56,461 bases of DNA from Macrostomum lignano (GCA_002269645.1 NIVC01004179.1:1-56461), one strand, 5' to 3'; counted from the first letter of the stretch, positions 3,665 to 39,280 are shown. Notes: generated by a model from the letters alone, not told the origin. Translations and numbers: made by a program.

Positions 3665-4847
<1,183 letters not shown>

Positions 4848-18989: not shown

Positions 18990-19545
18990 AATGCTTGCTA
19001 TTTAGGGATGCCTGCTATCTGCAGGATACTTGCTATCCGGGGGATGCTTGCTATCTGGGGGGATGCTTGCTGTCTGGGGGGATGCTTGCTGTCTGGGGGG
19101 ATGCTTGCTGTCTGGGGGGATGCTTGCTGTCTGGGGGGATGCTTGCTGTCTGGGGGGATGCTTGCTGTCTGGGGGGATGCTTGCTGTCTGGGGGGATGCT
19201 TGCTGTCTGGGGGGATACTTGCTGTCTGGTGGGATGCTTGCTATCTGGGGGGGGGGGTGCTTGCTATCTGCAGGATGCTTGCTATCTGCAGGATGCTTGC
19301 TATCTGCAGGATGCTTGCTATCTGCAGGATGCTTGCTATCTGCAGGATGCTTGCTATCTGCAGGATGCTTGCTATCTGCAGGATGCTTGCTATCTGCAGG
19401 ATGCTTGCTATCTGCAGGATGCTTGCTATCTGCAGGATGCTTGCTATCTGCAGGATGCTTGCTATCTGCAGGATGCTTGCTATCTGCAGGATGCTTGCTA
19501 TCTGGGGGGTGCTTGCTTTCTGGGTGGATTCTTGCTGTCTTGGGG
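18990..19545. repeat. Minisatellite: 19-bp units (GGGGGATGCTTGCTGTCTG) switching to 18-bp units (CAGGATGCTTGCTATCTG)
   Basis: Direct reading. The YLQDAC/MLAICR ORFs are artefacts. Confidence 0.96.
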
Positions 19546-20328
19546 ATGTTTTCTATTTAGGAAGATGTCTATTATCTTTTTGAAAGCTTTATTTCGTTGT
19601 CTTTTTGTTACTTTTGGAAAAAAGAGATTCATAGCAAACATCTTTGTCCATGATACATTTACTCGAATAAGGTGATTTATAAACAGAAGAAGGAATTGGT
19701 TCTTAACAAAATGTGCTTTGGATGGATTTGCATGAACTATTTTTGCTCCTTGCTTATTGTTGGGCGCCCCGAAGGGGACACTAGATTGATAGTTTTAATA
19801 ACTCCAAATGTTATTGGAAGCTTTATTAAGAGGATTTTCGGACAGATCAAAAGTACTTTTAGATCAAAATGTGTCAATCTTTTGTTGATCATTCGAGAAG
19901 TCTCATAGAGAAAACTGTAACTCTTTATAATGCTGTCAGCACACGTACAAGCAACCAACATACTTAAAGTATCAGTCTGTATAAAATTTATTTTTTCTAA
20001 TTTGTAACAAGAATGAGCAACTCCATTACCCGCAGTGCAAGGACGATTGAATAAGGAATGCAGATGTGCCATCCACTTAAATCAATTTTTGAGTATTTTT
20101 TTTAAAGTATCATTGACTCTCGTTGGTTATGTCAATGTCAATGTAATAACAATGTAATAACCCATTGACATTTCACCATTGACAATTGACCTGCATTTCT
20201 TACAATTACTACACCTGGCACTGCGGTTATCTAAACAGACATTGAGTAAACTATTAACTACTAATTTGATTTAAAAAATCGCGGCAAAACATTCAACAAA
20301 TCGTTAGTTTTTCATGAAATTGTTTCAC

Positions 20329-23300
20329 TCATTCACGCCTCTCCTCGCGCTTCCGGCGTTCCAGTTCCGCCCAGGCAGCGGCGATGCGCGCTGGGTGAAC
20401 AATTGGCTGCTGCCGCTGTTCGTCGTCCTGATTGATCAGGATCCCCATCAGTTCGTCCGAGTCTCGGAAAAACACTGCCTTCCGTTGCGCGATCCCTGGT
20501 GGAGCTAATGTAATGGGGTAACATTGAGTTTCGATGGGAATACACTTTCTGTTGACCCATCCTGCTTCAAGTTAATGCAAGTTTTTAATTATTAAACTAT
20601 TATTAGAAAAAATATTTCTGCAAAGTTTCTTGGACAAAAACGGAAGAATTTCTCACCATTGTTCATGCTCATAAAAAGAGCAAACTTTGCCACCCAGTAC
20701 TCCAGTGATGCAAGTCTCAATCTATCTTTCATTGGAAGCTGTTGAGCTTCAGTTGGCTGCTTCATCAGTAAGAGAACAATAGGATCCACCCAAAAGATGA
20801 TGGTCTCAATACAGTCTTCCATTTGCACTGAAATTTTCATTTTTAAGTTCCATTTTAACCATCAGACTAAGGTTTTTGTGAAACTCATGCAAACATCCAT
20901 TGACGAGAGACTTACCGCTCTCTCCTTCCTCGCTACCGGCGATGTAGTCGAAGTGCACGGACAGGTACTCATCACGCGGTGCTTGCTCACCTTCCGGCTC
21001 GTCCACGGCATATCGTTTCCGCTTCACTTTGGCGCAGTCTTCACACGGCAAAAGTGGCAGCTCCTGAGATGCTGTGGCAGCCGGATGCTGCGCTGGCTCT
21101 TCTTGTGCGGCCGCCTCCGCCAGCTCGTGAGGGTCTCGGGCGTCAAAGACTTGCCTCATTGCTGCAGGTAGTCCTCCGAGCCCCTCCAGACTCATGGAGC
21201 GCGACAGCCCATACTGGCTGACACTGAGTCCAGACGGGCCAACGCCAAACGCCCAACAGCGAGCTCTACGGGCTGTCGCCTTGGCCTCGAAACTTGCCAC
21301 GGCAGATGGAGAGAAGCTGCCGAGCCCGGCGTCAGTGAAGACAAGCACGTGCCGCTGGCCCGAAGGGTCTCGCAGCAGCAGCTGCAGCAGAGCCGTTAGC
21401 GCAGGCCCATCCGCACTTGCCGCCTGATTCGGATCAGGGGCCTCGCAGTTTGTCACCGAGCCAAGCAGTCGCGCCTTGTCTGCTGGGCTCCAGCCGACGC
21501 CAGCCGTCTTTACGACACTTACTGACTGCGAGAACGTCACGCAGCATGTGGAGACATGCTGGTGGTCCAGAGCCTCTGCTAGCGATACCAGGCTGTGTAG
21601 CAGCATTGGACGCGACGATACAGTGCTAGATGTGAGGGAGACAGCTATGCCTACAGCAATCCTGCGCTCTGTGACTCTGTGCCTTTGTAGCCAGATTTTG
21701 TTGCTAGTGCCATTTGTCATGAACCAGTTCATCAGGCCCCTGATGCTCAGCTTCTTGCCTCTGTTTGCCAGATGGTATCGCATCCGCGAGTGCTGGTTGG
21801 AAACTTGAATACTGCTAATAATCCGGTTGGTGCATGGATCCACTTTCGCCGCTAATTTCTTCCACATTTCATCCGCTGCATGGATTCCGGTGACATCGCT
21901 GAGTTCAGTTAGGTATCGCCGCATTTCGGGCATACTCAGGTTCGCTACTTCACCGGACAGATTTTCGTATTCGTGATATTGCGTCGTTATCTGTTCTTTG
22001 TTTAGCCCAAGGTCGTAGCCTTTATTTTCGCACTCGAGCCACTCTTCCAAAACAACCTGCCGGGGCTCGGGCACGAACTGACCGCATGGGTCTGGCTGGC
22101 TTTGCTCTACTTGGGCATTAGCAGCATTGGTAATAAAGGAAAGTTCTTCAGTCTCGGGGGCAGCAACGAAAGGGTTTTCTGGTCCGCTCCTTTCAATTCT
22201 TCCGTATTTCAGACACCAGTCCTCTTCAATCCACAAGGCGGAGTAAATTTCACCCGAAAACTGTTGCAGAGAATCCTGGAACAGCTGGGAGCCAAAGCCT
22301 CTGTGCTGATCCGTGATTAAAATCACCCACTGGCAGTCCAATATTTTCGAATCAGTTGCTAGGAGTTCGTCTGAATGACAATGCAGTTTGTGAAACACCT
22401 TGCGACAGGTGTGCGGCATCCAGGGGGTGTTAAAGTCTTTGATCGTTGCCGGTACGTTTGCCAGGGACATGAAGCCTTCGTTGCTGATTTGAACGCTTTT
22501 GTCCCCAGTGAGAACGATTTGAACTTTGCAGTTGTGCATTTCGGAATGTCTTACAACTCTGAACACAGCACGAGTGAGTTCATTTTCTTTTCGGCCATTG
22601 TTTTGCTTTTTCCACAGGGAACATTTTGTATCGATTAAAATGGTACCCCTCGTTTCCTTTTTAAGATTTGCATCTTTATGAACTCTTGTTTCCTTACTAA
22701 CGGTGCTGAAGGAAGTCAAATGCTGGACTTGAAACCAATTCGAGGGATCCGCTGTGAAGATAGAAGATTCCTGAGGTGGACGCTGGGCTGGTCTTCTGTA
22801 AGAGCGTCGCGAGTGAATTGGAACGTGTGGGTGAGAGATCTCCACAAAAGTACCTGCTGTACTGGCTTCGTTATCTGAGTCGTCTATTCCAGCACTGAAC
22901 TCTTGCATCCCAACCTCCGGCTCCGCGTCAACGTTCGATCGCGGACTAAACTTCATAACCCGACCGGTTGCTATTTCTGTCGATATATCTCCGCCAACAG
23001 CACCTTCCACTATGCTGGCATCTGACAGATGACCAAGGTGGCCGCTTAATGGATCTGCTATCAGCTGCATCGCTTTCTTCAAAATTGGTTGCTGTCGTAG
23101 AGGCAGCACTGGGTCCTTCTGCAGCTGATGCTGGGTTTCCTTCTTTTTCTATCTTTTGTGCATGCTCTGACATGAAAGTAGAATCTGGCTTGCCCTCAGC
23201 CGTTTCTTCCGGGAACGAATCAGTCGGTATTGTCGCTTCTAGAGCTGCACCAATAGCTTCTGAATTGGCTGTTTCTTCCTGTGCAGAGGCTCCTTTACTC

Positions 23301-26300
23301 GCTTCTGTTGGTTTTGTTTCTTCAGTTGATTCTTCATCAGGTTCTGTCACAGCTTCAGATTCTTCTGCACTCGGAGGTTTCATTTCGCTTTGATCTGTTT
23401 CCCTGCTTTCTTTTCTTTTTTCATCATTGATATCGCTCGTTTGGTTTGTATCACTCGGTGACTTATTTTCGGTATTCTGACCAGCTTGCTTTTCTTTTTC
23501 TATCGGTTCCGAATCGTTTGGTGCGAAATTTCCGTCTTCAGTCTGTAGCTGGTCAGTTTCTGATTCTTCTTGCGAATCTTTTTCGGATTCCACATCGCGA
23601 GAGGTTTCGTTCTTGTTCGTTTTCTCAGAATACGACCCCACTTCTCCTTTCTGTTCTGTTTGCTCGGAACGGGATTCTGCTGCCCCGGCTTCTTCTACTG
23701 GCTGACTCTGTTCGTCACTAGTTTCCAATGGATCACGATTTTGACTGGATTCAACAGATGAAGGGTCACTGTCCTTATGCTCTAAGAGCTCCTCCGCAGA
23801 AGACTCATCCTTGGGTGCCGTCCCGCCAGACTCGCTTCTTTCAGTCCCCGAGCCCGAAGGATCCGCAGACTCTGTCTGGCCAGACCCGCTCTCATTGGTT
23901 CCTGAGCCGGAAGGATCTGTAGACTCTGTCTGTCCAGACCCGCTCTCATTGGTTCCCGAGCCCAGAGGATCTGCAGACTCTGTCTGGCCAGACCCGCTCT
24001 CATTGGTTCCTGAGCCGGAAGGATCTGTAGACTCTGTCTGTCCAGACCCGCTCTTATTGGTTCCCGAGCCCAGAGGATCTGCAGACTCTGTCTGGCCAGA
24101 CCCATAGCCACCAGTCGAGGAGTCTTTTGCCTCCGACTGGCCCATGATTTGCTCGTCGGTCCCCATTGAAGGCGGAGGACTTTCAGTCAGACCGCTCTTC
24201 TCTGCATCAGCAATGGCCTCCTTGGCATTCTGAACTTTGTCCATCCACTTTTTGATTTCTTCTCCTCGCGGTCCAGCCAGGTCACTTTCAGTGGGCTGAG
24301 GATCTGAGCCTCCGCCTTCATCCAGCGAAAATCTATCAGCGTAGCTGTTAGCGATCGCCGACTTTAGCTCCTTTCTTAAATCCTCTTCCTTCGTAGTGGA
24401 GCTGAGAGCAAATCTGAATGCGCCGCTTGCATCTTTGTTGTTGATATTTGCACTATAGGACACAACTGTAGCTGCTTCTGTCCCATCCTCTTTTCCTCCA
24501 GAAATCACCAGTTTTTTCATCGGATTTTCTCACGACTGTCCAGCTCGGTCTCGTTCTCGATTTCCTTCTCGTAGGCATCAATGCCGCAAATTGCCGACTG
24601 AACAAAATCCACCCCTTTTATAATCGCGTGTGTTGCGGCACGAGCAAGCTGCAGAAGTACCTGGCAAAATTGGTAAAAAAGCCACTTGATTCCCGAGTTT
24701 GATTCGACCTTTTCCCTCATATTCCTGATGCTGTCATCCAGCTTTTGCTCCAATTTCTTGAGAAGTTTTCGAACGCTACTGATTATTTCTTTGATTAATT
24801 TCTTTATACTGAACGTGCTGTTCAGTCGGATGTCCCAGTCAAGAAATCTCCGCTGGTTCTCTCGTTCACCAAAGTTTAGCATTACTTCGACGGAAATAAT
24901 TTTGAAGAAAGTGACCTTAAACCGCGCGTAGAAGCACTTTTTGGCGGTGTCTGTCTCTATCTTGGCAGCTACTTCGATAATAAAAAATATGCTCACTTTG
25001 ACGTCCATCAGGAATTTTAGTCCTGTTGCTTTGCTCACAATCAAGTGCAGCTTTGGCCCCGCCTTGCCGTCGGTGCTGCTCACCTCAAGCAGGTCAAGCA
25101 GCTTTAAGGGCTCTACGAGCTCACCTCCGAACTCAATCTTCTTATCTACGCCATGAAAGGTAAAGCCTCCCCATAGGTTAGCGTTCACTCCGAGCCAGTT
25201 GATGGCCGCATCGAATTTGACGCACGGTCCAATCTCATATCTTTCCGTTAAGCCTTCCGGGTTGCCTCCGCCTACGTCTTCCGGTGTTCTGACAGCAGCT
25301 TTTTCAGTCATTTGCAGCTGACAGACGGGAAATTTTATTGACTCCATATTTTCATCGACGGCAAGATAGAGAAAAAACAAATGGTTGAATCCCGGCAGCA
25401 AGAAGTCAACGGTGTTCGTCAAGACTTCATCAACGCCAAGAAGCTTGAAAAGATTGGAAAACCGCAGGGTCTTCTTCTCGTCCTTTTGAAATCGGAAGTA
25501 AGCCCCTACAGGAACGACACGAGTAGGTTTAACCAAATCTTTTTTTCTTGTCATGAATCTAATGCGAAACTCAATGTCGCTCTCGAACAACTTCATGGCA
25601 GCTGCTACTTCAAAGCTTAATGCGTCTGACGGAACGGAAATGGAGAGCTGCATCGAAGCGGAGATCAGTGTTAAAAACTTTAGACCAAAGGGCGTTGGCC
25701 AGGCCAAGTCATTTTCACCGGTTATTTTCAAAGTACCTGAAATTTCTCGCTTTTTGCCACTGCTTTCGATGCTAAGCCTGCCTGAAAACTCAGCTTTGTG
25801 TTTGGCGTTTCCTAAGAATTCGGTGGGAAGATTTATATTCATCTTGGCGTCCAAGAAAAGCTTGATTATTCCTTGAGTCTTCTTTAATAACTTGCCATCT
25901 GCATCAGTCTGCTTTGATGCCTCTTCAGCTGCTTTAATGTGCACGAGTCCCAAGGAGAAGCAGAGCGACACGCAACCAAACAGTTCCACCGAGCCGCACT
26001 CGATGTCCAAACTAAAGCCGCTGCTCACAACGCTAAGACAGCCAGAAAAAGTTTTTCCCGTCAAGCTTAGAAAGTCGTACAGCCAATTCTGTGACATGGT
26101 CGCCTTGAATGACAAGACTGCATATGGTGTTTGTTTAGTTTTCTTCACGCATTCAGTCACGAAAGTTGAATCGTAGTTCATTATTTGCTTCATTTTATCA
26201 GATGCCTCGCTCAGCCTTTCACTGCAAATCTGTTCATTCGCTTTTTTAGAGCGCAGAAGCAGCACGAGCTGTAAGTTGTTGAACACTGGGATAAGCTCGA

Positions 26301-29300
26301 TTGATTCGACCACTTCAAGACCGTGCCAGATTTCGCTGAGTTTCCCTTCGTATACTACGCACACTAAGTAGAAGAATTCTTTTTTCGGGAATCCACCCGT
26401 CATTCCAACCTGAAACCCTTGTGGATTTCTGCAGGCAATCGCAAACTTCTTTTCCTTTAAGTAACTTTCACCGCGGCTCCACTTTCTTTCAGGTTGACCT
26501 CCCCAATCCGAGCAAGGGCGCTGCTGAAGCAGCTGTCCAAGGAATCCTGGTCGACAATGCTGCTGGCTTGCAGCTTGCCGTCGGATTCACCGGCATCTGC
26601 CGTGAGCTTCGGCTGAGACTTCTTCTGAAGTGTCAGCACACCGTTCGGCAGATCCAGCACCATGCCAAGCCGCAGCTTAAACAGGTCAAACAGGCAGAAC
26701 AGCTGAGTGTTCCAAACCTTTCCCGAATCGCCGTCCGCAGGCGCCTGAACGCACGAGCTCCTCCTCGCTCTGTGGCGTCTGATTAGCTTCATTGGTATTC
26801 TTTGCTCTTTCGAGCTTCAACTTTGCTCCAAGGCAAATAATTTTAAAAGGTTTTATCTGGCCCGTAGTCTCACCAATCACTTCTAATTCGAAAGAATCAG
26901 TGTTCTGTCGGGCTGAATCTTGGCTTCAAAATGTAAGAGCTTGAATGTCAGATCAATTTTTTTACTTAGAGATTTAACTTGCCCTCGAGTTTGAATTTCT
27001 CGGCAACAATTGCAGCCAAATCTCCCAGGCTAAAGTCGATCTTTTGTCGAGGAACAACTATGGTCCATGGTTGCTTTATCTCCAGGGGTAGCTCGACCTT
27101 GCAGTCTACGATTCGCAGGTGCTTCACTTCAGGTCTTCCAAGACAAAATGCGAAGTTCAGAGTCGCAAGCTTGAAACTGCTGTCAAACTTTTTATCGCTG
27201 CCCTCTTCGCCATCCGCAGACGCGCCAGCTATTTCTTGCTGTTTCTTTTCAACTCGAATCTTCAAGTCCTCGAGTCGGAGTAAGGTGCAGTTTGGAATTA
27301 GGCAAAGCCGCTGCAGTCCGAGCACAAGCACCCAAACATCGGGTTCCACCGCCTTCGTCCAGCTGAAATGAACTCCAACATCCGAAAGTATCAGGCCAAA
27401 GTCTGGCAAACTTGTCTTTAGCACACGGCCAAAAAGCTCGTTCAGTTTGATGTCTTCCGGAAGCCTTGCAGTGCTGCCGGTTCCGTCAAAAGATTCCGGC
27501 AATTCCAACAGCCAGCACTGGCGACCTTTTTCAGCCGGTCTGTGGAATTTCAGTTTGAGCCTACCCAGTCTAAAATCAGCCAGGGTCAGGTCAGCTGTCA
27601 GCTTGAAGTCAGACGTCGCTGAGTTGGAGTAAGTCCACAAGAAATCGATTTCAACAGATCCCAGCTTCAGTAGACTTGTGAAAGGCAATCTCAGCTCCTT
27701 GATTTTTGCCTCAAGTGTCAGTTTGTGAGTCTGACTGGCGGCGGCTTTGCTTTCTTTACCAGACTCTCCAGCTTCTGATGACCCGGCTTTGATGGAACAG
27801 CTTTCTTGGCTGCTCTTCGATGCTCCAAGCTCTGTCCTGTTCTCGTACCTCACTCTGAGCTTCTCAAATTTCACGAACTTAAGAAGTGGGACGTCAACTA
27901 GACTTGAGTTGATCTTCAGCAGTTCAGCAAAGGGTTTTATTAGTTCCACCAGAGTAAATTGGGCTTCAATATGAGCATTCAATGTGAACTGCATTGAGTC
28001 CTTGTCTCTTTTAACTTCTGACACGTAATCCAGGATAGGCAGAGTCAGGAATCGGATTTTTCCTTTAAGCGAGACCTGAAAGTGCCTGTCCTGATCGAAA
28101 CTGGTTACTTTCATGCTGAATTCCGAATCTGTGAGCTCAATCTTCATCAGGCCTTTCTTCAATTTAATCAAGTCAATTGTCATCGCCAGCTCGCAGGTTT
28201 TCTCTTTGAAGTCTAAATAGCCACTGACGAGCTTGTCAAGATTGGTTCTGACCAGCACTTCTGGTATTGCCTCGGCTGACACTTCGAAATTCTTAGACAC
28301 AAACGTTTGAAGACTGAAAGTTCCTGTACCATTTTGACGCGGCAAGACCTTCAACTCGTTGCTGGATGTCAAAACAAATCTCGAGCCATTGTCTTCACAT
28401 TTTAGTAGAAGCTGACAATCAAGAATGTCGAATACGGCATAGAAAGTGCACTTCGTTGGGCTTTCAGTTCTTATCTGCACACAGAAGGCTTTGCCTGCTA
28501 AGAGCTTTGAGACTCTGAATGAGTAGCTCTTGGTCAGAGTTTCTAGTAAGAATCTCTTTAAGCTGTTGTCGAAATTCCACTCGATATCAACAGCTGTTTC
28601 GGTAAACTGCATTACTGATGGAACACCGTAGTTGGACAGGTCAACACCCCGCCCCATGCATTCTGCCAGCAGGGACACTACGTCAGTACTTGAGTAGTGC
28701 GTTTTCAGATCGCACTGACTGACTGCCCAATGCTGGTCGTTGATGGGGTAGGAGGCGGACAGAGTTGGAGTTTTCAGCTTCGCGCAGTTTCCCAGCTCCA
28801 GAACCATTGACAGACTTGGATAGCGGAGCATTTCGTCAATGAGGGTGTGCACCTCTCCTCTGCTGGTGCTCAGCTCTATTTCTGTAAGAGTCAACATAGG
28901 GCTGAGGCTGACGGGCTTCATATTAAGCATCATTTCTAATTCTTTTGGCTTCGTCCAATCGTTCCACTCCATCGAGTAGTTGCATTTTTCAACCATGACT
29001 CCTCTAGTGGCTTCATTCTCTCGCGACAGCCGGCTCGCTACAAGTACAGAAAGGTCGAACGGCTCAATAGATTTGTCATCGGTTTGTAGCTTCCAACAAG
29101 TTCTTTTTTCTGCATTCCTATCCGCTGTCTGACACTGCAACTTGTTCTCATGCTCACACAGTAGAATGCTGAAGTGTCCTAAGTTCTGTCCGTGCAGAAT
29201 GAGATCTCCCTCAATCAGGCTGCCGCACCATTTCTGATGCGCGGCCTTCCTTCCATGGTTCCGCAACACCATGCTGACTGACCGCAGCACAAGCTGGCTA

Positions 29301-32300
29301 TCAACCTCGGAGTGAATGTCAGAAGAAGCTTTTGCTGTTAACTTTAGTTTCCATTTTGATATGTCAATGCGAATTTCCACTCCGCTGATTGGCACATTCG
29401 GGAACGGCTGCTGCACCTCCAAGTTCATGTCCTTCATTAGCTTGAGCAAGAGGCTTCCTCCATCATCTTTCGCCTGACTGGAAGAACAAAGCGTTAGTTG
29501 CAGCTGCTTGGACTTACCGGCCCCTGTTTCTTGTGCTCGTGTTATTTTTAAATCAAACTCGATGCCTAAAAGCGACAGCAGATCCATCTTTCCTTTTATG
29601 CGCACGACCATGTCCGACGGCTCCTTGCCCTCGATGACCAGCTGGGCCTTGTAAAACTGCATACTCGCTGTGTATTGATTCTGCATCTCGAAGTTGGAGA
29701 TTTGCGCTTCCATGCTGACTTGGCCTGATGAGTCAACCCGAAAGCTCTCCACACGATTGATCTGAGACTTTTCTGACAAGCCTGCCACCTCCTCGTCGGA
29801 GGCTTTGAAGATTTGCTTGATAAACATCCGAAGATTAACGTTTTTAGTTTCCGCTATCTTCGATTGAAACTGAAGTTCGGCGATAATATCCGATGAAACT
29901 CTCGCGAGCTTGATGCCGAACATGCTCAAAACTCCCTTCACCTTGCACTTCCAATGCCCACTCGACTCGTGAAGATGCAGCTCTACTTCCCCTATGCTGA
30001 AAGGAAAATTTCGATTAGGTAGTTCGAGCGCTCGGTTTTCTGGCGCACTTATTATGACTCGCGCATCAGACTGCTGCTCTTTGATTTCCATGCTTTGTAC
30101 CGATAAAGTCAAGACCTGCTTAGCAGAAAACCAACTTATGAAGGCCAGCGACTCAGGGACCTCTTCCAAGCAAAAAGAGATTATGCTAATTATCTTTGTG
30201 CTGCACTCAGCCTCAAAAGGGTCGATTTTTAGCAGCGTTTGCGACATGTCGATTGTTCCTTTAAAAGTACTTTTCTTTTTTGCTTCCTTAACCTGCATCT
30301 TGCCCGTTAGAAAAACAGTTTTCGTGTGTTGAATTTCCAGTTGAACGTCTTCGAAACTGAACAACTTGAAAGCCGGCCATCCATAATTGATTTTTTCATC
30401 GAAAGTCAGCTTAAAGAAGTTCGAGTCTTCAACCGCAGCAATCATAATTCTGTTGCATATTTCTTTTGCTCTTTCGTTCCAATATGGAATTTTGGGGGGC
30501 AGAAAATTTCTGAAAATAAAAACATCGCTCGGTTTCAAGAGTTTGATTTGAAAGAAATCATATCCCGAGGAGTTGGACTGAAGGCTGAGGTCGACCTCAT
30601 TTCCTTTTCTTGTATCTCCTGAGCTAAGCACAGCTTTTAGTTTGGCAGAGAAAACTCGCCTCTCCATATCAATAGAGAGTTTTCCGTGCAGATCCGACAT
30701 CTTTACTTGGATTCCAAGAAACCGATGGCAGTCAGCTGACTCTACAGCAAAACTGATGTTTGCGAAGTCTTTGAGCCGCGGAGTAACAGTTTGTACCGCT
30801 GAGCTACCAATTGAAACTCATTGGTTTTGCTGCTTCCAATTTTGAATCTGGTATTGTGATAACACTCGCTTATTGCTCTAGTTAAATCCAATGGAGAGGT
30901 TGCTACTTCTGTTTGCTCTTTTCCATTGCTAGAAAGATGAACTGGAATGTTTCCCTCGGCAAAGAGACCAATTCTAGCCTTGAATTCCCACATCGGCTTT
31001 CCTTTCTTTACTGTCATACTGAAGTTGCTGTCCGCGAAGTAAACATTTGCACTTTCACCGCTACCGTCTTTAAGCTGGTACTCTATGAGCTCGGGATCCG
31101 AGATAGCAGTAGTTCTGCAGAGGAACTGGTTGAACTTCAATGATTTCACTACACTTGGCCCATCGAAATGTCTCAAAAATTTTGTAGGAACAGCATTCTC
31201 CAAGCTAACACTTCCTTGTTCCAAATGAATATTAACAACAATATTAGACCCACCGAATGAGCAGCAGAATTCCCAACTGAAATTAAGTGCTTCCTTTTCA
31301 TTACTGGTAAGGTCACCGACTACTTTCCACAGGAAGTCTCCAGCCTTATTGTTGCAAAGCAAGTGCCGACACTTCAGTTCACTCTCGAATGGCAAAAGTA
31401 TGTTGGTAATAACAGGATGAAAGTGTTCGGAGTGGGACAGCTTCACTTTTGCATGAGCCTCTGGATCCCTCTGCAGTCGGCTGATGGCACAGCCCATGCT
31501 GCTGGTTACGCTCTGGATTTCATCACCTACAAATTGGACAAGAGCTCTCTCTGCAGACTTTGACTTGCATTTCATTAAGACGATAATATCCATTAGCTTT
31601 CTGTCATGAATTGCCTCAACTTTTTGAACGGATTTTAAATTGAATCTGGGCGAGAGAATTCGTCCAGACATGTAGTACTCCTCTTTGTACTTCAACGACT
31701 TCGACATCATTTCGCCCACCTGACATCTCAGCGTCTCATCAAAAATGTCTTCCATGAGACTCGATGCATCAAGCAGCATTCCATTTTCAATAAAAAATAA
31801 AATGTGTCTCAGATCTCTTGCGGTCACTTGCTCCCTTTTTGCCTTTTCTGACGTTTTAAAATCGTTGATGAGACGTCGAACGATGGAAGCAATTTCGTTG
31901 TTGCATAGAGTTCCATCTCTTAGCGGCGCGAACAGGTCAGGAAAGCAGTCCGTTTGCGGATCCAACTTGGGACAGAAAATCTCAATGCAGCGGTTGCGGA
32001 AAGATTCAGACAGCTGAAAGCTGCTACTTCTACCGATTGTTGCTGTGCAGATGAGAGCAAACCCAGGTTTCGGATCGATTCCGCCCTTCGGTCCGTCAGT
32101 GAGAGCCACTTCATGGACGTACAATCGCTGGCCCGACTCGCCAATGGAATTGAGCCTCTCGATCACCTCTGGTCGCGCGTGGTCAACATTGTCCAGCAGG
32201 ATCCAGTTACCATTCTTCATCGACTTTACTAGAGGCCCGTCAACAAACTGAAAGCTGTTTTTGGAGCCACTGCTGACCGGGGAGAAGCCGCCAATGAGGT

Positions 32301-35300
32301 CGCAGACGTCAGTATCAGCATGAACCGCAACAGTGACCAGCTGCTTGCTGCACCGCCGAGCCAGCTCTGCAACTGCGCTGCTCTTTCCGGAAACTGGAGG
32401 TCCTAGTAGAAGTAAGATTTTACCACTTCCAATCGATTGTTGCAGGAGACGCACGAGTCTGTCGGATGCGTCGCAAGGATTCAGCCTCTGACTTGAGTGT
32501 AAGAAGTCCCCGCGGCTGGTAAAAGCTCTCTTAGCTGTTTCTTCTGGAGACTCGCAAACAGCTAGTTTGCTTATCAGCTCCTGGGTTTCGGAACTACTGG
32601 AAGAACTACATTCGCAGTATACAATACCAAGAGCTTCTTTCACAGTGTTATGCGCGTTCAACAAGCCGACAACCTTTTCTACATCTCTAAGATTGAATTT
32701 ACGATCAAAGTGGCCAGACGGGCATGCGTGATCTTTACAGCTAGCAACCATTTGCCAGTGAAATGAAGCCACTGCTTCAGTATTCGGACCAAATTCATTT
32801 CGAAACTTTTCGATTATTTCTTGCATCTCTTTCTCTCCGATGACGTCCACGCTTACCTCCGTTAGCAGCTTTGACAGAGCTGGCGGCAGCTCCTGGCGTC
32901 CTCCGCCAGAACTTGCCGGGTTCATCGCGCACACAAACTGCAGCTGCAATGCGACATGTTATGGAGAACAGCGTTTTACAGATTACTTTTGACTAAACTT
33001 TCTGTATACAACTAGGAAACCCTAATGATAAATAACTCAATTTTCTATAATTTCAACAGCGTTGTGTCAATTGCTTCTTACCTTTTTCAGGGAATATTCC
33101 TTAGAGTTTACAACCATCTTTATGCCTTTAGGATGCTTCATGATGCCTAAAATAATTTCAGAGAACACTGTCAATCAAGAAAATAACATAAAACGATAAA
33201 ATGTACTTCTATTAAAAGCGATTTGTTCTGCTTACCAATAATTGTGCTCAGAACATTGCTGGGAGCCAAATTAATTTCGTCGAATAAAATAACGGCTCCT
33301 TGATATTCATCGGAACTTTTCGGTTTTCTGCCCGCCATTCGAGCGGAGTCGGCCACTGCTGCCTGCTCCAGAATTGCACCCTCTCTGAATTGAAATGTCA
33401 TTTTGGTAGCCTTAGTTCCCGAATTCGAGTGCGCCGTTGGAACAAATGACCCAAATAGGTCTTCTTGAGAAAGATCACTAGAGCAGGAAATTCTGATGAA
33501 CTTCTTTTTAAGAACCGATTCTGCAAATATCCTCGTGATTTGGGTCTTGCCAACTCCCGGAGGTCCAACGAGGTTGACCACTGATTCAGTGTAATGAGCA
33601 ATTAGCAAGTGGCTAAGTACTTCTTTTGCCCGCCGGGTTACTGTCAGATTCTGACTCACTCTTTGAAACTCCTGTTCTGAGAATAGCGATGCTTCAGACA
33701 GAATTTCGTTTGGACTGTCACTTTGTGGAAATTCCTGCTTCAGGGCGAGACTAAAAGGTGATTTGCAACATTTTGGAGGAATTTTTGCAAATGATGCCAT
33801 GTTGACTAGGCTCTTCACACTCAGAATTCCATTTGAGAGTTTCAAGGCTTCGCTAAGGCCACGGTCGATGTCTTCCGACAAAGAGGAAGGGATTGACGAT
33901 TCTCTGCTCAGGATATCCCGAAAGAAGACTTCAGCCTCGCTGCCTCTGCTCACATCTGTCAGCTGAGGATCTCGCACATGAATCACTGTGTACCGCGACC
34001 TCATTGAGGGCGAGATGTCTTTGTCCGTTGGCAAAGAGATTGTGGCTATTAGCCTAAAGTTCACGCTCAAAGCGATCGGAGCATCAAACTGATGAGGATG
34101 AGTAAAGCTGGGCTCTAACTCGGTCACGCTGTTGAGACACTCAATAACTGCCTGATCAGCAAGGTTAATGTCTCTCAGGAAGGCAATTCCACCGAAGCGA
34201 ATATTTCTCATGATTCCCCTCTCACAGAAAGGAAAAATCTGAGATCCCGATGAGCAAAGGGACAAGTTTTGCAATGTTTCATGCGCGAACGCTGCATCAG
34301 AGAGGAGGCATTGCTGAGGACAGCCGATAAAATCAGCTGAGTGCTGCTTCAGTATGTCGCAAAACTGACTTGACTTGCAGCTCTTCCATCTCTCTACTGC
34401 AGGTGATTGCTTGAATGGGGCTGGTAGTTCGTTTGTAAGTCGATTTCTAAGCTTGGAGCAAGTGCTTTCGAAGTACGATGTGCATTTACTGAAGCTCTTT
34501 GCCTTGCTCGGATACCGCGTCATCAGCAACTGTGCAGCTGGATTGGCGCAAGTCTCTTCGAAGGACTCCGCTGAGTGCGGCTCGATCCCGCCAAACAGAT
34601 CTCGGGTCTCGGTTAGATCCGACATGTACAAAGTAGTCAGTCTGCAAAGCTCAGGAGCACCAAAGTCTACGATTTGAGTCAGGTGGCGCACCATCGTTGC
34701 TTTAAAATTCGTCCGGCCTTCGAGCACCACGGGCTCAGCGAAGTGGAGCGCCAGTGCAAGCTTGCAAAGGCTCAGCTGTTCGCTCCTTATCATGGGCTGC
34801 GGAAGGCTTTTCTGCAGCGCTTTCAGCTTCACAGACACAGTTGCCGACACAGCTACATCTCGAAAGAAAATTTCAAAGAGCCAATCGTTTTCGACGCATT
34901 CAATTTTGCAGTCCAAAACTGCTGCTTGAGGTGGAAATAGGTCCATCAAAACGGCAACGTGTAGCTTCACCTTTTCCAGCCAATTTTCTGCGCTCAAATC
35001 TTCCGTAATTGTGAGTCGCCTCACAAGCTTTAAAAGAGTTCTCAAGGTTGTTAAGTTCGATTGGTTGTGGTGACCCTGCAAATATTTAACAAGCTCTTGG
35101 ATTCGAGTTCTCATCTCCGAGCTTGATAGCTCGCTACTAAAGAGATTTTTTGCCACATTTTTCATGAATGACCTTGCTCCGTGGTATAGTCCTGATAGAC
35201 TTTTTATTTCGCTGCTGGGTTTGTTCTGCTTCATCGAGTCTGCAAAACATGCTACTTTTCCGTAGAGGATGTCGACGATCTCATCGCGAGTGTAATCTGG

Positions 35301-38300
35301 CACCGAGTACTTCACCAGTCTGGCCAGCACAGGTTCTGGAAGGCACTGTCTTCCAACATATTCTGTCGGATTTTGCGTACCCACAAGGCAAACTCCGGGT
35401 GAACATCAAGCCATTGTTGTCGAATCGAGCAACGAAATTTGCTGCCACCGCTCAGAAGAGGCGTCAGATAGCTCGTGACTTCGGGCGATGCCAAATTAAG
35501 CTCGTCCGCAATAAATATGCTTCCTTCTCTCATGGCCTTGCTCAGCGGCCCTTCTTTGAACTTGGCCTTCGTTCCATCAGGCAGATAGCAGCCCATTAGG
35601 TCAGTAACAACTGTGTCCTTGTTGAACAGAAATATAACTGGCCTGGCCGCATAGCCTAAATGATTGCTCACTAGCTTTACAAGCGATGTTTTGCCTACTC
35701 CGGAGTGCCCTTCCAGCAGCACGGGAATCTTCATTCTGAGGAGAACCATTAACAGGCCAGCCAGTTTCTGTCGAGACTCCCCAAGAGTGTACACTGGACT
35801 GTCAAGAATAACATTCTGTGTCCATTCGTGTTTGCATTCTACGGACGACTCAAGCACTAATTCTGCAATGCTTTCAACTACTTGAAACCAGTCATAAAGA
35901 GAATAATTTTTGCCATCTAAAGCGATAGGCTTCTTGGCCAAGTAATTGGTTCCGTTTACGAATTGGGCTATCTTCCCGATCGAGGCGTAAATCAGTTTAC
36001 ATTTTATCGTCGAATCTTGTTCGCGCATCGGCAAGTGACGGAACATCAAGTCCAGAATTCTTCGAGCATTGTTTCTGCTCATTCGATTCGCGATAAAGGA
36101 TTCGACATCCGAGCTCAATATGTTTTCCGGCACGTAAAATATGACGAAACGACTGAGGAACGACTGGGGCAACTCGAATAGTTCGTTCTGACGCTGCTGA
36201 CTGAATGTGGCGAGCACAAAGAAGCTTGGATCAACCGGCACCATCTTGCCGTCAATTAGATAGCGGCGCTCTGGCCCTGTCTCCAATAGTGCGTTCAGAG
36301 ACTCCAAGACTGCCTTTTCTACCAAGTTAATCGACCTGAGTACCAGGCATTTTCCCTCTTTGATAGCTCGAGCTACTGGTCCGTCAACCCATTGGAATAC
36401 GGCTCCTGAATCCTAAAATGCAACATCAAAAATGATGTCAAAGATAAAAAGATAAGGTACTCGTACATGAGTTTTCGAGAGCTACGGTAAATAAATAAGT
36501 ACAAAAGCTCACCTGGGGCTGAAACTGTCCCACAGATCATCAGTTGATGTTTCAGAATGGCAATAGTATTCCTCAAGTTCGATGTTTCTCTTCTTTGCCC
36601 AAATCCAAATGGCGGTGAATTTTCCCGAGAAGCTTTCCCCGACCAGCATGCCGGGCCTCTTCGTGTCATGACAGAGATCAAGATACTCCATAGTGTCGCT
36701 GTAGGTGCTGAGTACTGCCACTTCGCCAATTCTCAGGTCGGATAGATTTTGGGACACCTGCTTGGGTCCGAATTCCATTTGCAAACTTTCTTGAACAAGC
36801 GTATGAGTTTCTTCAGCTTGCGAAGCAGTATTTTCGCTGTGCCGAGAAAAAAGACACATGAGCCGGTTTGTCACTTCCTCGGGCTTAGAATTGATAATAA
36901 TGTCTTGAGCATGCAGCAAATCTCGAAGAGTAACATGCAGTTTATCTTTGAACTTCCTGTAGATTGAAATCAGTTTATCGGCCATTTGAGTATTGCCGTC
37001 TGAGCATCTGCCTTTTAATATTTTTTCGACATCATCATCAGGCAGCTTTGAAAAAGTTAAGCGGACAAAGTGGCTCATAAGAGACTTTGAGAAACGAAGA
37101 CTGTCGAATCCAAAAACAACGACATTCGAATTTTGACAAAGGAAAAGGCGAAAGTTCGGGTGGCGTCGGTAGCACAGACATCCATTCTCCGCATCTGACT
37201 GGCCGGCGATGAGGCTGTCCCGAATTTGCAGCATCCCTGTGTCCAGAACGTCCTCCAAAACCCGCAAAACAGCGTCACTCGCCAGATTGGCCTCGTCCAA
37301 CAGAAGCCAATAGCCGTCCCTGACTGCTCGGGTAAAGATGCCTGGCTCGAACCGGAACTGCGATCCGGATCCCGAACCAGCGAATCGAACACTCCCGAGT
37401 AGGTCTGCCGCGCTGGTGTGTGGTGACAGGGTAAATCGCAGCAGCGGGGCGCCGGAGATGGCAGCGCAATACCGAACTGAGAACGTCTTTCCTGTGGCTG
37501 GTTCGCCTTCAATAAAGACGGGCATGTTGGAGTTGATCAGCAGTAATAGGCGCTCAACATTTTCTTTGGTCCGGTCAGTAAATACGAAGTTCATTGTTTC
37601 GTGGCTCTCAACCGCTTGTTTCATGCTTTCTGAAATTTCCGATGGAACACTTTCTAGACTTTGTCTTGGCAGTCTTATTCGCAAGTGATCGTCGAAGAGC
37701 TCCTCAACTTCTAGCTCTCTATTTTCGTGGATACTCAGAAAGAGCTCCTGTACAAAATAATTTTCTTGAGGTAGCTTTCCTTGGAGTTTCAAATGCTTCG
37801 TAAGCTTCTCGTGGCTGAACTCAGACATCAGAGTATCCATGTACTTTTTGTCACTCCTTTTCCCTGCTTTGATGAATGGCAGAAATCTGTTTTTGTCTTT
37901 ATTTGCTTTAGTTTGTTGTTGCTTTTTCGCAGTCGGCTGTGTAATACCAACAGGTGTGGGTAGCGGTCGACTAGACCTCACGCTCCACCTATTGCTTTTG
38001 CTTTTCTTAGCCACCTGCTGCTCCAGAACAGTCACCTTTTGATCCACTGAGCCTATGATAATGTCAAGACATCGCGCGTCCAACACCTCATCTGGCAAAG
38101 CGACCTCATCGGAATCTTGCTTTAACTTCCGGATCTGAATCACTGACTCTTCGGATGGGTTCACCAAATAGTAGGCGTTCTCGAGAGGATCCGTGGCCAG
38201 CCTTATTGGAGCATCGAGTGCTGCTTCACCGGCCTGAGTGACGTCCCAGTCAACAGACAGAGCAATCACATCGGTCGCGGTTAAGCTGTCGACAATACAG

Positions 38301-39094
38301 CCCTCGGCTTTGAAAATGGCATCGATTCGGTCACTCTGGTGACCAAGCCGGGCGGTGCATAACTTCCAAACCCGCTGATGCAGAACGACCATGCGAAGGA
38401 GAAGCTCATCATTCAAGTTAACAAAGACAGCGCCTTTAACATCCGATCGACAATAGATGGTTGGAGTTTGTTCTTTCAGGGGTACTAGATAGAATTGCAT
38501 TCGGTTCGAACTGTCCTTAGCAAATATTGTGGCGAAATCGGCATTCTCTGAAACCTGATAGTGAAGCACCGATCTCAGGCTCAACTTGTGCTCTAATCGA
38601 AGGTCATGCTGGTCGAAACCAGCTTGATTGTTCTTGTAAACCCTGATTCCAGCCCAGTGGTGAATCAGAGTGCTTTCGGTTACTACAGCAAAAACATCGG
38701 TGCTAAGCCACACTAGCTTTAGCGCTTTCTCAGCCTGCAACGAGTGCACAGCAACGGGAGACCATGGTGAGCTCGAGGCAAAGTCGAATACTAGTACTCG
38801 ATCGGCAGAGTTTCTTCGAACCACAACCGCAAGCCTCGAAGTCGTATCGTTCGGTACGGTGTGAACAATGGCGTCATTGCCACACTCGGGTATGACGAAT
38901 CGGCGAAGCGTGTAAGATTCCGGGTCAAAGACAGTCGTGCAGTTCACTTCAGAGCCCTTCAGTCCCAGAATATCCGGTAAACTGTACGAACTGTGGATAA
39001 CGGCCGAAGTCTTCGTGAAGAACACATCGTGCAGTTTATAGTTCTTGTCAGGACCGACCACGTCAAGTCTGAAGGGGAAGTTATCCCCTTCCAT
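20329..39094 (-). CDS. Giant divergent midasin/Rea1-like AAA+ protein (~6,000 aa): propeller-like N-terminus, 6 AAA modules, beta-rich linker, acidic region, two vWA-like domains, C-terminal extension
   Basis: Exons are 39094-36513, 36412-33236, 33146-33082, 32943-20916, 20827-20657 and 20561-20329, with GT-AG introns of 100, 89, 138, 88 and 95 bp. Phases are compatible, the first junction only after the ~36534 correction. Walker A motifs: GEPATGKT, GESFSGKF, GHSGVGKT, GRTNFKA, GPPGVGKT, GPPVSGKS. The C-terminal RGKKLSIRGLMNWFMTNGTSNKIWLQRHR matches the midasin GKRLNIRKVIPYIAS..KDKIWLRRT pre-MIDAS motif. About 9 single-base frameshifts are needed to join the ORFs. Confidence 0.85.
21140..22655 (-). 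other. Two vWA-like domains (~22655-22200 and ~21670-21140)
   Basis: First domain: TILIDTKCSL...VQIVLTG...WVILITDQ...EIYSALW. Second domain: VGIAVSLTSS...CCVTFS...VLVFTDAG...CWAFGVG. Confidence 0.65.
23850..24105 (-). repeat. Coding tandem repeat, 54-bp unit (SGSGQTES[AT]DP[LS]GSGTNE), ~5 copies, within the acidic region
   Basis: Direct reading in ORF 22946..24520. Confidence 0.93.
31900..37600 (-). other. Six tandem dynein-related (AAA_5/MoxR-like) modules of the giant protein
   Basis: Each module shows Walker A, a DL(L/F/M/I)GxFxP-type motif, a FxFxxGP-type motif, a Walker B position, the LNxxLE-type helix and HPxFRL-type/sensor-1 motifs. Confidence 0.9.
38070..39094 (-). other. N-terminal domain resembling the clathrin heavy-chain terminal beta-propeller
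   Basis: By-eye colinear matches: FPFRL~LPIRF, AVHSL..KLVWLSTDVFAVVTESTLIHHW~KAHTM..[30 protein letters not shown]~IINYRTDAK, RMQFYLV~AMQLYSV. Confidence 0.55.
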
Positions 39095-39280
39095 GCCTGA
39101 GAGCTGGGGAATAAAAGGAGCATTTTCGGGTTTCGCTTCTTGCTGCGCAATTTACGATCAAAATTCTATCAAATCAGAAATTCAGTCAATGCAGCGAAAC
39201 TGTGGAAATGTTAAGAGCCTTATTATCCGAAACTAGAGCTAGTTAATTAATTGATGGGTAAGCAGCAAGATGACTTCACT

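What the first reader, a model, noticed from the sequence alone, without database searches (positions are those of the whole stretch)
24520..31400. A ~2,200-aa beta-strand-rich linker replaces the helical midasin linker
Seen: long runs of alternating hydrophobic/polar residues (e.g. LKLGSVEIDFLWTY, FKLTADLTLADFRLGRLKLKF, WPTPFGLKFLTLISASMQLSISV, GPKLHLIVSKATGLKFLMDVKVSIF), ending in an amphipathic helical block (IKKLIKEIISSVRKLLKKLEQKL). This pattern suggests a repeating beta-groove or sheet like bridge-type lipid-transfer proteins (VPS13/AsmA/TamB-like) or the large uncharacterised microbial proteins with W.xPFG motifs. That family link is unverified recall.
Basis: inference. Interest (0 to 1): 0.72.

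Follow-up and report, generated by a model that had tools for sequence, protein, structure and literature searches.

The report
Beta-strand-rich arm of giant midasin-like ATPase
The flagged stretch really encodes about 2,200 mostly beta-strand residues between the six-AAA+ motor ring and the acidic tail of a roughly 6,000-residue midasin-like flatworm protein from an undescribed family also found in an annelid and a ciliate; its 3D fold and any lipid-transfer role remain unproven.

Summary
Observation confirmed. All five quoted peptides lie on the minus strand inside 24520-31400. Alternating hydrophobic/polar periodicity is far above shuffles (z=10). The AAA+ ring of the same gene and five canonical midasin linkers show the opposite, helical signal.

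The window is Macrostomum lignano DNA. It carries one gene of about 18 kb (39094 to 20806, minus strand). Its order is a marginally clathrin-like N-terminus, six AAA_5 modules, about 200 helical residues, a beta-rich region of about 2,200 aa containing two modules of about 540 aa, a helical hairpin, an acidic repeat region and a conserved VWA-like C-terminus. About eight frameshifts, mostly single-base losses at homopolymers, look like assembly errors.

The beta region is homologous to Owenia fusiformis (26% identity over about 1,950 aa). The same architecture exists in Paramecium. A full HMMER search of 1.84 billion proteins found only four relatives. No Pfam or PDB sequence match was found, and there was no match to canonical midasin linkers.

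The AlphaFold models are low-confidence (pLDDT 37-42) but strand-dominated. Foldseek gave nothing significant.

The "beta-rich, non-midasin linker" reading is supported. The VPS13/AsmA/TamB link and a microbial donor are not. The gene is a separate midasin-like paralogue family, not midasin with a swapped linker.

The parts
37800..39094 (-). N-terminal domain of about 430 aa of the giant protein (start ATG at 39094). It is strand-type and marginally similar to the clathrin heavy-chain N-terminal propeller.
   Evidence: A profile of four orthologues (A6) has clathrin heavy chain N-terminal domains as its only coherent PDB hits, E 0.03-0.04, colinear over residues 113-182 vs 98-173. No Pfam hit.
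31960..37600 (-). Six tandem AAA+ (AAA_5) modules, with GT..AG introns. Walker A is intact in AAA1 (37507), AAA3 (35710), AAA5 (33566) and AAA6 (32403), and degenerate in AAA2 (36640) and AAA4 (34718).
   Evidence: Pfam AAA_5 hits at E 1e-13 to 1e-18. Motif coordinates. 99% identity to M. lignano A0A1I8I014.
31401..31959 (-). Helical segment of about 190 aa after AAA6, before the strand-rich region.
   Evidence: AlphaFold DSSP for model 2 residues 1-185: 59% helix, 0% strand, at low confidence.
30742..31400 (-). First ~220 aa of the strand-rich region, still in the reading frame of the AAA part. That frame stops at 30742-30744.
   Evidence: DSSP strands start at model-2 residue 206. Homologous to paralogue P0070, which reads on without a break.
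30745..30850 (-). Frame switch of -1 type between the AAA-part frame and the 1244-aa ORF. Probably a single-base assembly deletion.
   Evidence: Paralogue P0070 is colinear across the junction, 33 aa against 98 nt. P0070 is an uninterrupted 7.4-kb ORF in its own locus.
26966..30700 (-). 1244-aa ORF forming the core of the strand-rich region. It contains module 1 (about 29980-28393) and most of module 2 (about 28392-26800), an internal duplication of about 540 aa.
   Evidence: hhalign of alignment slices gives up to 97% probability for aa 241-770 vs 770-1300. Homology to Owenia ORF-B at E 1.8e-111.
26404..26965 (-). Continuation of the coding region through four intron-less frame switches. Readable pieces are KKIDLTFKLLHFEAKIQPDRT 26963-26901, EVIGETT... 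26883-26809, ...NTQLFCLFDLFKLRLGMVLDL 26711-26649 and YLKEKKFAIA... from 26463.
   Evidence: Colinear with the single ORF of relative P0068. At 26460 the sequence GTTAC stands where GTTTAC is needed.
24820..26403 (-). Most conserved part of the strand-rich region. It carries the family motif A-W-P-T-P-F-G-L-K-F-L-T at 25704-25669.
   Evidence: 47% identity to P0068 and 28% to Owenia. The motif is conserved in Mac, Owenia and P0068. This is the best-modelled part, pLDDT 60-75 and all strands.
24520..24819 (-). Helical hairpin that ends the region (two long amphipathic helices).
   Evidence: DSSP helices at 983-1017 and 1021-1068 of model 1. Alpha-moment z=5.7. Conserved in Owenia.
22946..24519 (-). 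Acidic, Ser/Thr/Gly-rich low-complexity region: 21% D+E, with GSGQTES... repeats from a 54/108-nt tandem array at 23825-24103.
   Evidence: Composition; TRF.
20806..23109 (-). C-terminal region with a conserved domain of about 480 aa. It has VWA-like motifs (RRIAVGIAVSLTSST 21666-21622; RHVLVFTDAGLGS 21354-21316) but a degenerate DxSxS.
   Evidence: 31% identity to the Owenia C-terminus. The profile hits Paramecium ORF-B at E 1.2e-15. Only a weak PDB hit to the midasin MIDAS domain 6qt8, E 1.2. No Pfam hit.

Best explanation
Window 24520-31400 (minus strand) is genuine coding sequence for the middle region, about 2,200 residues and predominantly beta-strand, of one giant protein of about 6,000 aa in Macrostomum lignano.

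The domain order is: a strand-type N-terminal domain, a single-chain ring of six AAA+ modules, about 200 helical residues, the strand-rich region, a helical hairpin, an acidic low-complexity tether and a VWA-like C-terminal domain. The strand-rich region was built in part by tandem duplication of modules of about 540 aa.

The protein belongs to an uncharacterised, ancient, patchily distributed paralogue family of midasin, seen in a flatworm, an annelid and a ciliate. The strand-rich region occupies the topological position of the alpha-helical Rea1/Mdn1 linker but is not homologous to it.

Inferred mechanism, by analogy with Rea1/Mdn1: the region is a long semi-rigid arm. It holds the acidic tether and the C-terminal ligand-binding domain at a distance from the ring and transmits ATP-driven ring movements, so that a bound partner is pulled or remodelled.

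Shown: coding status, composition, conservation, modularity, position and non-homology to midasin linkers. Inferred: the single polypeptide across the frameshifts, the 3D fold, and the force-transmitting role.
For: - Coding and strand-rich.
- Gene architecture: six AAA_5 modules; acidic region; conserved C-terminal domain shared with Owenia and Paramecium.
- Organism and family: 99% identity to M. lignano A0A1I8I014. The next relatives are Owenia (35% identity, 78% coverage) and Paramecium (27%), well ahead of canonical midasins (24-28% over 16-38%).
- Same neighbour in Owenia and Paramecium: a giant Pfam-less ORF directly downstream of the AAA part.
- Homology of the strand-rich region: Owenia E 1.8e-111, 26% identity over about 1,950 aa. 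Only four relatives in 1.84 billion proteins.
- Internal duplication and module amplification in the paralogue locus.
- Single polypeptide: paralogue P0070 is one uninterrupted 7.4-kb ORF from AAA6 into the strand-rich region. Relatives read through the window's other frameshifts. Six of eight switches are -1 type, and the switches whose sequence was checked lie at short homopolymer runs.
- Rea1 architecture used for the analogy: PMC6286127.
Against: - AlphaFold confidence is low (mean pLDDT 42 and 37, pTM 0.34 and 0.31; MSAs of 6 and 4 sequences), so the fold is not established. About half of the residues are modelled as coil.
- No evidence bears directly on force transmission.
- The C-terminal domain lacks a canonical DxSxS MIDAS motif and has no significant VWA or MIDAS hit, which weakens the analogy with Rea1.
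- The window copy carries about eight frameshifts and could be a decaying duplicate.
- The frame of the AAA part really does stop at 30742, and an ATG follows at 30700. In Paramecium an in-frame TGA separates the two parts. A two-protein arrangement is therefore not excluded.
Confidence: 0.55

Rival explanations
1. The strand-rich region is a bridge-type lipid-transfer groove, either a repeating beta-groove as in VPS13/ATG2/BLTP or a beta-taco as in AsmA/TamB. In this reading it is fused to an AAA+ ring, and its hydrophobic strand faces line a lipid channel.
For: - Long amphipathic strands with strict alternation.
- Very long all-beta region ending in amphipathic helices.
- The weak Foldseek neighbours of model 1 are curved antiparallel meander sheets such as porins, ushers and VDAC.
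Against: - No Pfam family of the VPS13, ATG2, Apt1, AsmA or TamB groups at E<=10.
- No PDB sequence or profile hit.
- No VPS13, ATG2 or TamB entry among the 50 hits listed for either model, all with TM<=0.35.
- The DSSP string shows meanders of 7 to 11 strands with tight turns, not a regular five-strand-plus-crossover unit.
- There is no N-terminal membrane anchor; the region starts on an AAA+ ring.
- Alternation of hydrophobic and polar residues is equally expected for any solvent-exposed sheet.
Confidence: 0.1
2. The region is a string of independently folded beta domains (sandwiches or barrels). It would act as a passive spacer or as a multivalent binding scaffold, not as a force-transmitting lever.
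For: - Modular build: modules of about 540 aa duplicated in tandem, with variable copy number in the paralogue and permuted order in P0071.
- Low-confidence inter-module regions.
- Fast sequence divergence: Paramecium is not alignable in this part although its ring and C-terminus are.
Against: - No recognisable Ig, FN3, C2 or other beta-domain family.
- Modules of about 540 aa are much larger than usual beta-sandwich domains.
- The ring - arm - acidic tether - terminal domain order is conserved, as in Rea1.
Confidence: 0.2
3. The 'linker' is a separate protein. The AAA motor ends at the stop at 30742, and a second cistron starts at ATG 30700 and encodes the strand-rich region, acidic region and C-terminal domain. 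This would match the annotation in Owenia and Paramecium.
For: - Stop at 30742-30744 and an in-frame ATG at 30700.
- Two adjacent gene models in Owenia and Paramecium, less than 80 nt apart.
- In-frame TGA in Paramecium with no 3n intron across it.
Against: - The break positions are not homologous. The Owenia break lies about 230 aa upstream of the window's, and one extra T in a T4 run repairs it (sequence).
- The window is colinear with the unbroken paralogue ORF across the junction.
- The ORF-B frame is open about 50 codons upstream of the ATG.
- The same gene has about seven other frame switches of the same kind.
Confidence: 0.1
4. The window copy is a pseudogene, a decaying duplicate in the repeat-rich and partly duplicated M. 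lignano genome, so the region no longer makes protein.
For: - About eight frame switches without introns in 18 kb.
- The copy differs by about 1% from annotated protein P0001, so it is another allele or copy.
- The strand-rich ORFs are absent from both protein databases.
Against: - There is no in-frame nonsense codon in about 6,000 codons once the frames are followed.
- Six of eight switches are single-base losses at short homopolymers, as expected for long-read consensus errors.
- Conservation with Owenia is spread over the whole length.
Confidence: 0.15

Closest known systems
Midasin / Rea1 / MDN1
   Same: Single chain with six AAA_5-type AAA+ modules, followed by a very long intervening region, an acidic low-complexity region and a conserved C-terminal domain with VWA-like motifs. 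Total size is 5,000-6,000 aa. Midasins are the nearest named relatives of the ring (PMC6286127).
   Different: - The Rea1 linker (about 1,700 aa) and its N-terminal domain are alpha-helical (PMC6286127). Here the corresponding parts are strand-rich and do not align.
- Ring identity to canonical midasins is only 24-28% over 16-38% of the query.
- Walker A is degenerate in AAA2 and AAA4.
- The MIDAS DxSxS motif is degenerate and no MIDAS or VWA model matches.
Uncharacterised orthologues: Owenia fusiformis (P0003 plus P0069, 2544 + 3952 aa), Paramecium pentaurelia (P0005 plus a downstream ORF of 3531 aa), M. lignano paralogue PAA85953.1 (P0070)
   Same: Same N-terminal domain, ring, strand-rich middle region and C-terminal domain in the same order. 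The strand-rich region is alignable with Owenia and the paralogue (26-29% identity). It shows the same beta-amphipathic signal in Paramecium, z=7.7.
   Different: They are annotated as two genes or as fragments. Module number differs. The Paramecium strand-rich region is not alignable at sequence level, and its low-complexity region is not acidic.
Bridge-like lipid-transfer proteins (VPS13, ATG2, BLTP1-3) and bacterial AsmA/TamB
   Same: Very long, strand-dominated, amphipathic regions ending in amphipathic helices. This is a resemblance at the level of sequence pattern only.
   Different: No sequence, profile or fold match was found. There is no membrane anchor, no regular five-strand repeat, and no bacterial distribution.
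Dynein heavy chain and VWA8 (other multi-AAA_5 proteins)
   Same: Related AAA_5-type modules arranged in one chain. VWA8 also ends in a VWA domain (established knowledge).
   Different: The dynein linker is helical and N-terminal to the ring, and VWA8 is under 2,000 aa with no long strand-rich region (own knowledge, not tested here). Neither appeared by name among the ring hits.

Membership tests
Midasin (MDN1/Rea1) | Six tandem AAA+ (AAA_5) modules in one polypeptide | tested here: met
   Four strong Pfam AAA_5 hits, plus two degenerate modules recognised by motif and by alignment to orthologues.
Midasin (MDN1/Rea1) | Alpha-helical linker of about 1,700 aa (stem, middle, top) homologous to that of Rea1 | tested here: not met
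   Beta-moment z=10 and alpha-moment z=-1.6 here, against alpha z 3.3-6.4 in five canonical linkers. DSSP is strand-dominated. No alignment to 61 midasin/AAA_5 relatives; best E 0.37.
Midasin (MDN1/Rea1) | D/E-rich region after the linker | tested here: met
   Positions 24519-22946: 21% D+E, 33% S+T+G, repeat-based.
Midasin (MDN1/Rea1) | C-terminal MIDAS (VWA) domain with a DxSxS metal site | tested here: inconclusive
   A conserved C-terminal domain with VWA-like strands is present. It has no Pfam hit at E<=10, only E 1.2 to 6qt8, nothing with the profile, and the DxSxS position reads S-L-T-S-S.
Midasin (MDN1/Rea1) | Orthology: closest relatives are canonical midasins over the full ring | tested here: not met
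   The closest relatives are the Owenia, Logan and Paramecium proteins (916-1032 bits, 481 bits). Canonical midasins score <=329 bits over 16-38% of the query.
Repeating beta-groove lipid-transfer proteins (VPS13/ATG2/BLTP) | Match to family models (Chorein_N, VPS13, ATG_C, Apt1 and others) | tested here: not met
   Zero Pfam families at E<=10 for the window and Owenia regions.
Repeating beta-groove lipid-transfer proteins (VPS13/ATG2/BLTP) | Continuous hydrophobic groove built from five-strand repeats | tested here: inconclusive
   Models have pLDDT 37-42. Foldseek found no hit at E<=0.001 and no RBG protein among the 50 hits listed for each model.
AsmA/TamB-like bacterial proteins | AsmA or DUF490 sequence family, bacterial distribution, N-terminal membrane anchor | tested here: not met
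   No Pfam hit. The HMMER scan found relatives only in eukaryote-type sequences, plus one 2.1-kb MAG contig that is probably mis-binned. The bacterial genome scan was negative. The region is preceded by an AAA+ ring, not an anchor.
New midasin-like paralogue family (Macrostomum/Owenia/Paramecium) | Colinear N-terminal domain, six AAA, long strand-rich region and conserved C-terminal domain | tested here: met

The most novel reading that the evidence does not exclude
Most novel reading not excluded: these proteins are a third class of single-chain hexa-AAA+ machines, beside dynein and midasin, and ancient in eukaryotes. Their 2,000-residue all-beta arm would be a lipid- or hydrophobic-cargo-conducting groove, making this an ATP-powered bridge-type transfer protein. 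A weaker version is that the all-beta arm is a new kind of mechanical lever.
Probability: 0.08. Interest if true: 0.9.

Novelty: new variant of a known kind. Interest (0 to 1): 0.55.

Why it matters
In both well-studied single-chain AAA+ ring machines, dynein and midasin, the mechanical element is an alpha-helical linker whose remodelling produces force. This family has a midasin-like ring, acidic tether and terminal domain, but a non-homologous, modular, strand-rich region of about 2,200 residues in the linker position.

That makes it a natural test of whether such motors need a helical lever. It also adds an unstudied branch to the MoxR-dynein-midasin clade. The family is absent from Pfam, and I found no paper describing it. 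It is mis-annotated as two genes or as fragments in three genomes, and it is nearly invisible to sequence search, with four relatives among 1.84 billion proteins.

If the arm turns out to be a groove, it would link AAA+ motors to bulk lipid transfer. If not, it is still a large, conserved, unexplained protein of ciliated organisms.

Tried and rejected
- Word-indexed homology search with the 1244-aa ORF and with the Macrostomum+Owenia alignment gave zero hits. These giant proteins are not in that database.
- Pfam at E<=10 on all strand-rich pieces, the N-terminus and the C-terminus found nothing relevant.
- PDB sequence and profile searches with the 628-aa ORF (24517-26403), A2, A4 and A5 found nothing significant.
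- AlphaFold2 with the only MSAs obtainable (6 and 4 sequences) gave low confidence. Foldseek against PDB on both models gave no hit at E<=0.001. The third Foldseek job, against the viral library, was not used because it would say nothing here.
- The search for related loci with A2 had no conserved stretch to search with. With A1 on bacterial genomes and on metagenomes it found no relative, though the peptide patterns chosen by the tool were not the best motif.
- I considered a conserved bicistronic arrangement, or programmed -1 frameshifting or read-through, at the ring/arm junction, because Macrostomum, Owenia and Paramecium all break there. I rejected it as the main reading. The break positions are not homologous, there is no slippery heptamer in Owenia, a homopolymer repair works in Owenia, and the paralogue ORF is unbroken.
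- I looked for small introns at the 30790 junction and found no GT..AG pair of sensible length and phase.
- Literature searches for a described midasin paralogue, or for a link between beta-groove proteins and midasin, found nothing relevant.

Full report
**What is in the window.** The window behaves like eukaryotic DNA. It has many minisatellites and GT..AG introns of about 100 nt. One very large gene lies on the minus strand from ATG 39094 to about 20806. The AAA part is 99% and 97% identical to two Macrostomum lignano (flatworm) proteins, A0A1I8I014 and A0A1I8JC40, so the organism is M. lignano or a very close copy.

**Gene architecture.** Pfam finds AAA_5 (dynein/midasin-type) domains in four ORF pieces. 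Motif inspection and alignment to orthologues give six modules. Walker A is intact in AAA1, 3, 5 and 6, and degenerate in AAA2 and 4. After AAA6 come, in order:
- about 190 residues modelled as helices;
- the flagged region;
- a 524-aa acidic, Ser/Thr/Gly-rich repeat region (21% D+E; 54/108-nt tandem array at 23825-24103);
- a 767-aa C-terminal piece that contains a conserved domain.

**Checking the observation.** I measured the fraction of 11-residue windows whose hydrophobic moment is dominated by a 170-degree (strand) period.
- In the first 1,900 residues after the junction it is 0.199, against 0.082 +/- 0.012 in shuffles (z=10). The 100-degree (helix) signal is slightly depleted.
- The AAA ring of the same gene gives z=-1.3 for the strand signal and +5.3 for the helix signal.
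- The terminal 120 residues give helix z=5.7.
- Linker segments of five canonical midasins give strand z about -1 and helix z 3.3-6.4. This agrees with the published description of the Rea1 linker as alpha-helical (PMC6286127).

No DNA tandem repeat lies in the region.

**Reading frame.** The region is not a single ORF in the window. Following homology, the frame path on the minus strand is 0, 2, (introns), 1, 0, 2, 1, 2, 1, 0, 1. Eight switches need no intron, and six are of the minus-one type. The ones whose sequence I checked lie at short homopolymers:
- CTG-TGGG where the relative reads CTGGTGGG;
- GCCTTG where it reads GCCTTTG;
- GTTAC where GTTTAC is needed.

The annotated M. lignano proteins read through the first two, and relative P0068 reads through those around 26.4-27.0 kb and 24.5 kb. 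No in-frame nonsense codon appears in about 6,000 codons. I therefore treat the switches as long-read consensus errors (about 70%) rather than decay.

**The ring/arm junction.** This needed more care. The AAA frame stops at 30742 and an ATG follows at 30700. In both Owenia fusiformis and Paramecium pentaurelia the orthologous AAA gene is followed within 80 nt by a second giant gene model without Pfam hits. Several observations argue against a real two-gene arrangement.
- The break positions are not homologous. The Owenia break lies about 230 residues upstream of the window's, and one extra T in a T4 run repairs it.
- The M. lignano paralogue PAA85953.1 (P0070) is an uninterrupted 7.4-kb genomic ORF running from AAA6 into the strand-rich region.
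- The window is colinear with it across the junction, 33 aa against 98 nt.

A single polypeptide of about 6,000 aa is the best reading. The Paramecium in-frame TGA remains unexplained.

**Relatives.** The strand-rich region is clearly homologous to the Owenia downstream ORF: E 1.8e-111, 26% identity over about 1,950 aligned residues. Shared landmarks include A-W-P-T-P-F-G-L-K/R-F-L-T and the terminal helical hairpin. A full HMMER scan of 1.84 billion representative proteins with residues 941-2140 found only four relatives:
- a Logan contig product (47% identity);
- the Owenia protein;
- the divergent M. lignano paralogue (29%);
- a 688-aa fragment on a 2.1-kb contig filed under a Kangiellaceae MAG, most likely a mis-binned animal contig.

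The Paramecium downstream ORF cannot be aligned in the strand-rich part. It does have the same strand periodicity (z=7.7). It also carries the conserved C-terminal domain (profile E 1.2e-15), on top of an orthologous ring and N-terminus. The architecture is therefore old and patchily retained. Nothing points to a bacterial donor: there is no bacterial family in the HMMER scan, and the scans of bacterial genomes and metagenomes were negative.

**Internal structure.** Profile-profile comparison of slices of the Macrostomum/Owenia alignment shows an internal duplication. Residues about 241-770 match about 770-1300 with probabilities up to 97%. These are two modules of about 540 aa, each ending in a C-K-V-E-L-P...W...P-x-Q motif. 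The paralogue locus carries at least four near-identical tandem copies of a unit of about 690 aa, and the MAG fragment has the modules in another order. The arm therefore grows and shrinks by module duplication.

**Fold.** Two AlphaFold2 runs covered the post-AAA6 tail plus residues 1-785, and residues 941-2140, using the only MSAs obtainable. Confidence is low: mean pLDDT 37 and 42, pTM 0.31 and 0.34. The secondary structure is nevertheless consistent.
- The strand-rich part is 30-37% strand and 13-17% helix.
- In blocks with pLDDT >= 50 it has 197 strand against 11 helix residues.
- 40 of 83 strands are 9 residues or longer.
- The run of strands ends in two long helices.

Foldseek against PDB gives no hit at E<=0.001. 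For model 1 the weak neighbours are porins, ushers and VDAC, which are generic curved antiparallel meanders with TM<=0.30. For model 2 the hits are noise. No VPS13, ATG2 or TamB entry appears among the 50 hits listed for either model. Pfam at E<=10 and PDB sequence and profile searches are empty. The fold is undetermined. The bridge-lipid-transfer idea is neither supported nor strictly excluded.

**Flanking domains.** A profile of the N-terminal ~430 aa from four orthologues has clathrin heavy-chain N-terminal propellers as its only coherent PDB hits, but only at E 0.03-0.04. The C-terminal domain has VWA-like strand motifs but a degenerate DxSxS, and only an E 1.2 hit to the Rea1 MIDAS structure 6qt8.

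**Interpretation.** The gene is not midasin with a swapped linker. It belongs to a separate, undescribed midasin-like paralogue family. The ring is only 24-28% identical to canonical midasins over a minority of its length. The N-terminal domain is different and the linker is not homologous.

Because the order ring, long arm, acidic tether, terminal domain mirrors Rea1 (PMC6286127), the most economical mechanism is that the strand-rich region is the arm. It would space the terminal ligand-binding domain from the ring and couple it mechanically. That step is inference, at about 0.4. Coding status, strand richness, conservation, modularity and non-homology to midasin linkers are shown.

The rivals are a lipid-conducting groove (0.1), a passive string of beta domains (0.2), a separate second protein (0.1) and a pseudogene copy (0.15). 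The pseudogene question is independent of the structural ones.

**Verdict.** I rate it as a new variant of a known kind, a midasin-type AAA+ machine with a non-helical, modular arm. Interest is moderate to high (0.55), limited by the low-confidence structure and the lack of any functional data.

Noticed in passing
window 36553, 35390, 30790, 26966, 26890, 26780, 26460, 24520, 23100 (approximate, minus strand): Intron-less frame switches in an otherwise intact 18-kb gene. Six of eight are single-base losses, and those checked lie at short homopolymers. Relatives read through them. They are probably long-read assembly errors, which also explains why the strand-rich ORFs are missing from protein databases.
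   Followed up: partly
L001 17351-17353 (Paramecium pentaurelia CAJJDO010000125.1): A single in-frame TGA separates the AAA-ring ORF from more than 3,254 further codons in the same frame, which encode the strand-rich region and the C-terminal domain. No 3n intron spans it. It could be gene fission, read-through or a base error.
   Followed up: partly
L002 27691-27733 (Owenia fusiformis CAIIXF020000010.1): The two annotated genes (2544 and 3952 aa) overlap in different frames. One extra T in GGCATTTTAATC would join them into one ORF. The strand-rich part and C-terminus form an intron-less ORF of at least 10 kb after an intron-rich AAA part. The window shows the same pattern, with no intron needed from 32949 to 20806.
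   Followed up: partly
window 39094-37800 (-): The N-terminal ~430 aa are marginally similar to the clathrin heavy-chain N-terminal beta-propeller (profile E 0.03-0.04). This differs from the alpha-helical N-terminal domain of Rea1.
   Followed up: partly
window 36640-36617 and 34718-34695 (-): Walker A is degenerate in AAA2 (GESFSGKF) and AAA4 (GRTNFKAT). AAA1, 3, 5 and 6 keep GxxxxGK[T/S].
   Followed up: no
L004 9971-21365 (M. lignano NIVC01000300.1): A divergent paralogue of the whole gene, about 29% identical in the strand-rich part. It carries at least four near-identical tandem copies of a ~690-aa module. This is either a recent amplification or an assembly artefact.
   Followed up: partly
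L003 (GCA_036350755.1 JAZBNS010000684.1, 2.1 kb): A 688-aa relative of the strand-rich region is deposited as a Kangiellaceae bacterium MAG protein. The contig is one open frame, 46% GC, and is most likely a mis-binned eukaryotic fragment.
   Followed up: partly
window 1-1020, 1881-2517, 3666-4839, 6353-7217, 12312-12831, 16440-16859, 18991-19556, 39282-40073, 49543-51213: Dense minisatellite arrays flank the gene. The long ORFs over them are repeat artefacts, including those at 18965-19675 and 39251-40192. The 'DUF6944' hits at 49534-51312 lie on a 21-nt array and are probably artefacts too.
   Followed up: partly
window 46479-47603 (+): ORF with a C2H2 zinc-finger hit (E 5e-6) in a GC-rich stretch. 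It may be a neighbouring gene.
   Followed up: no
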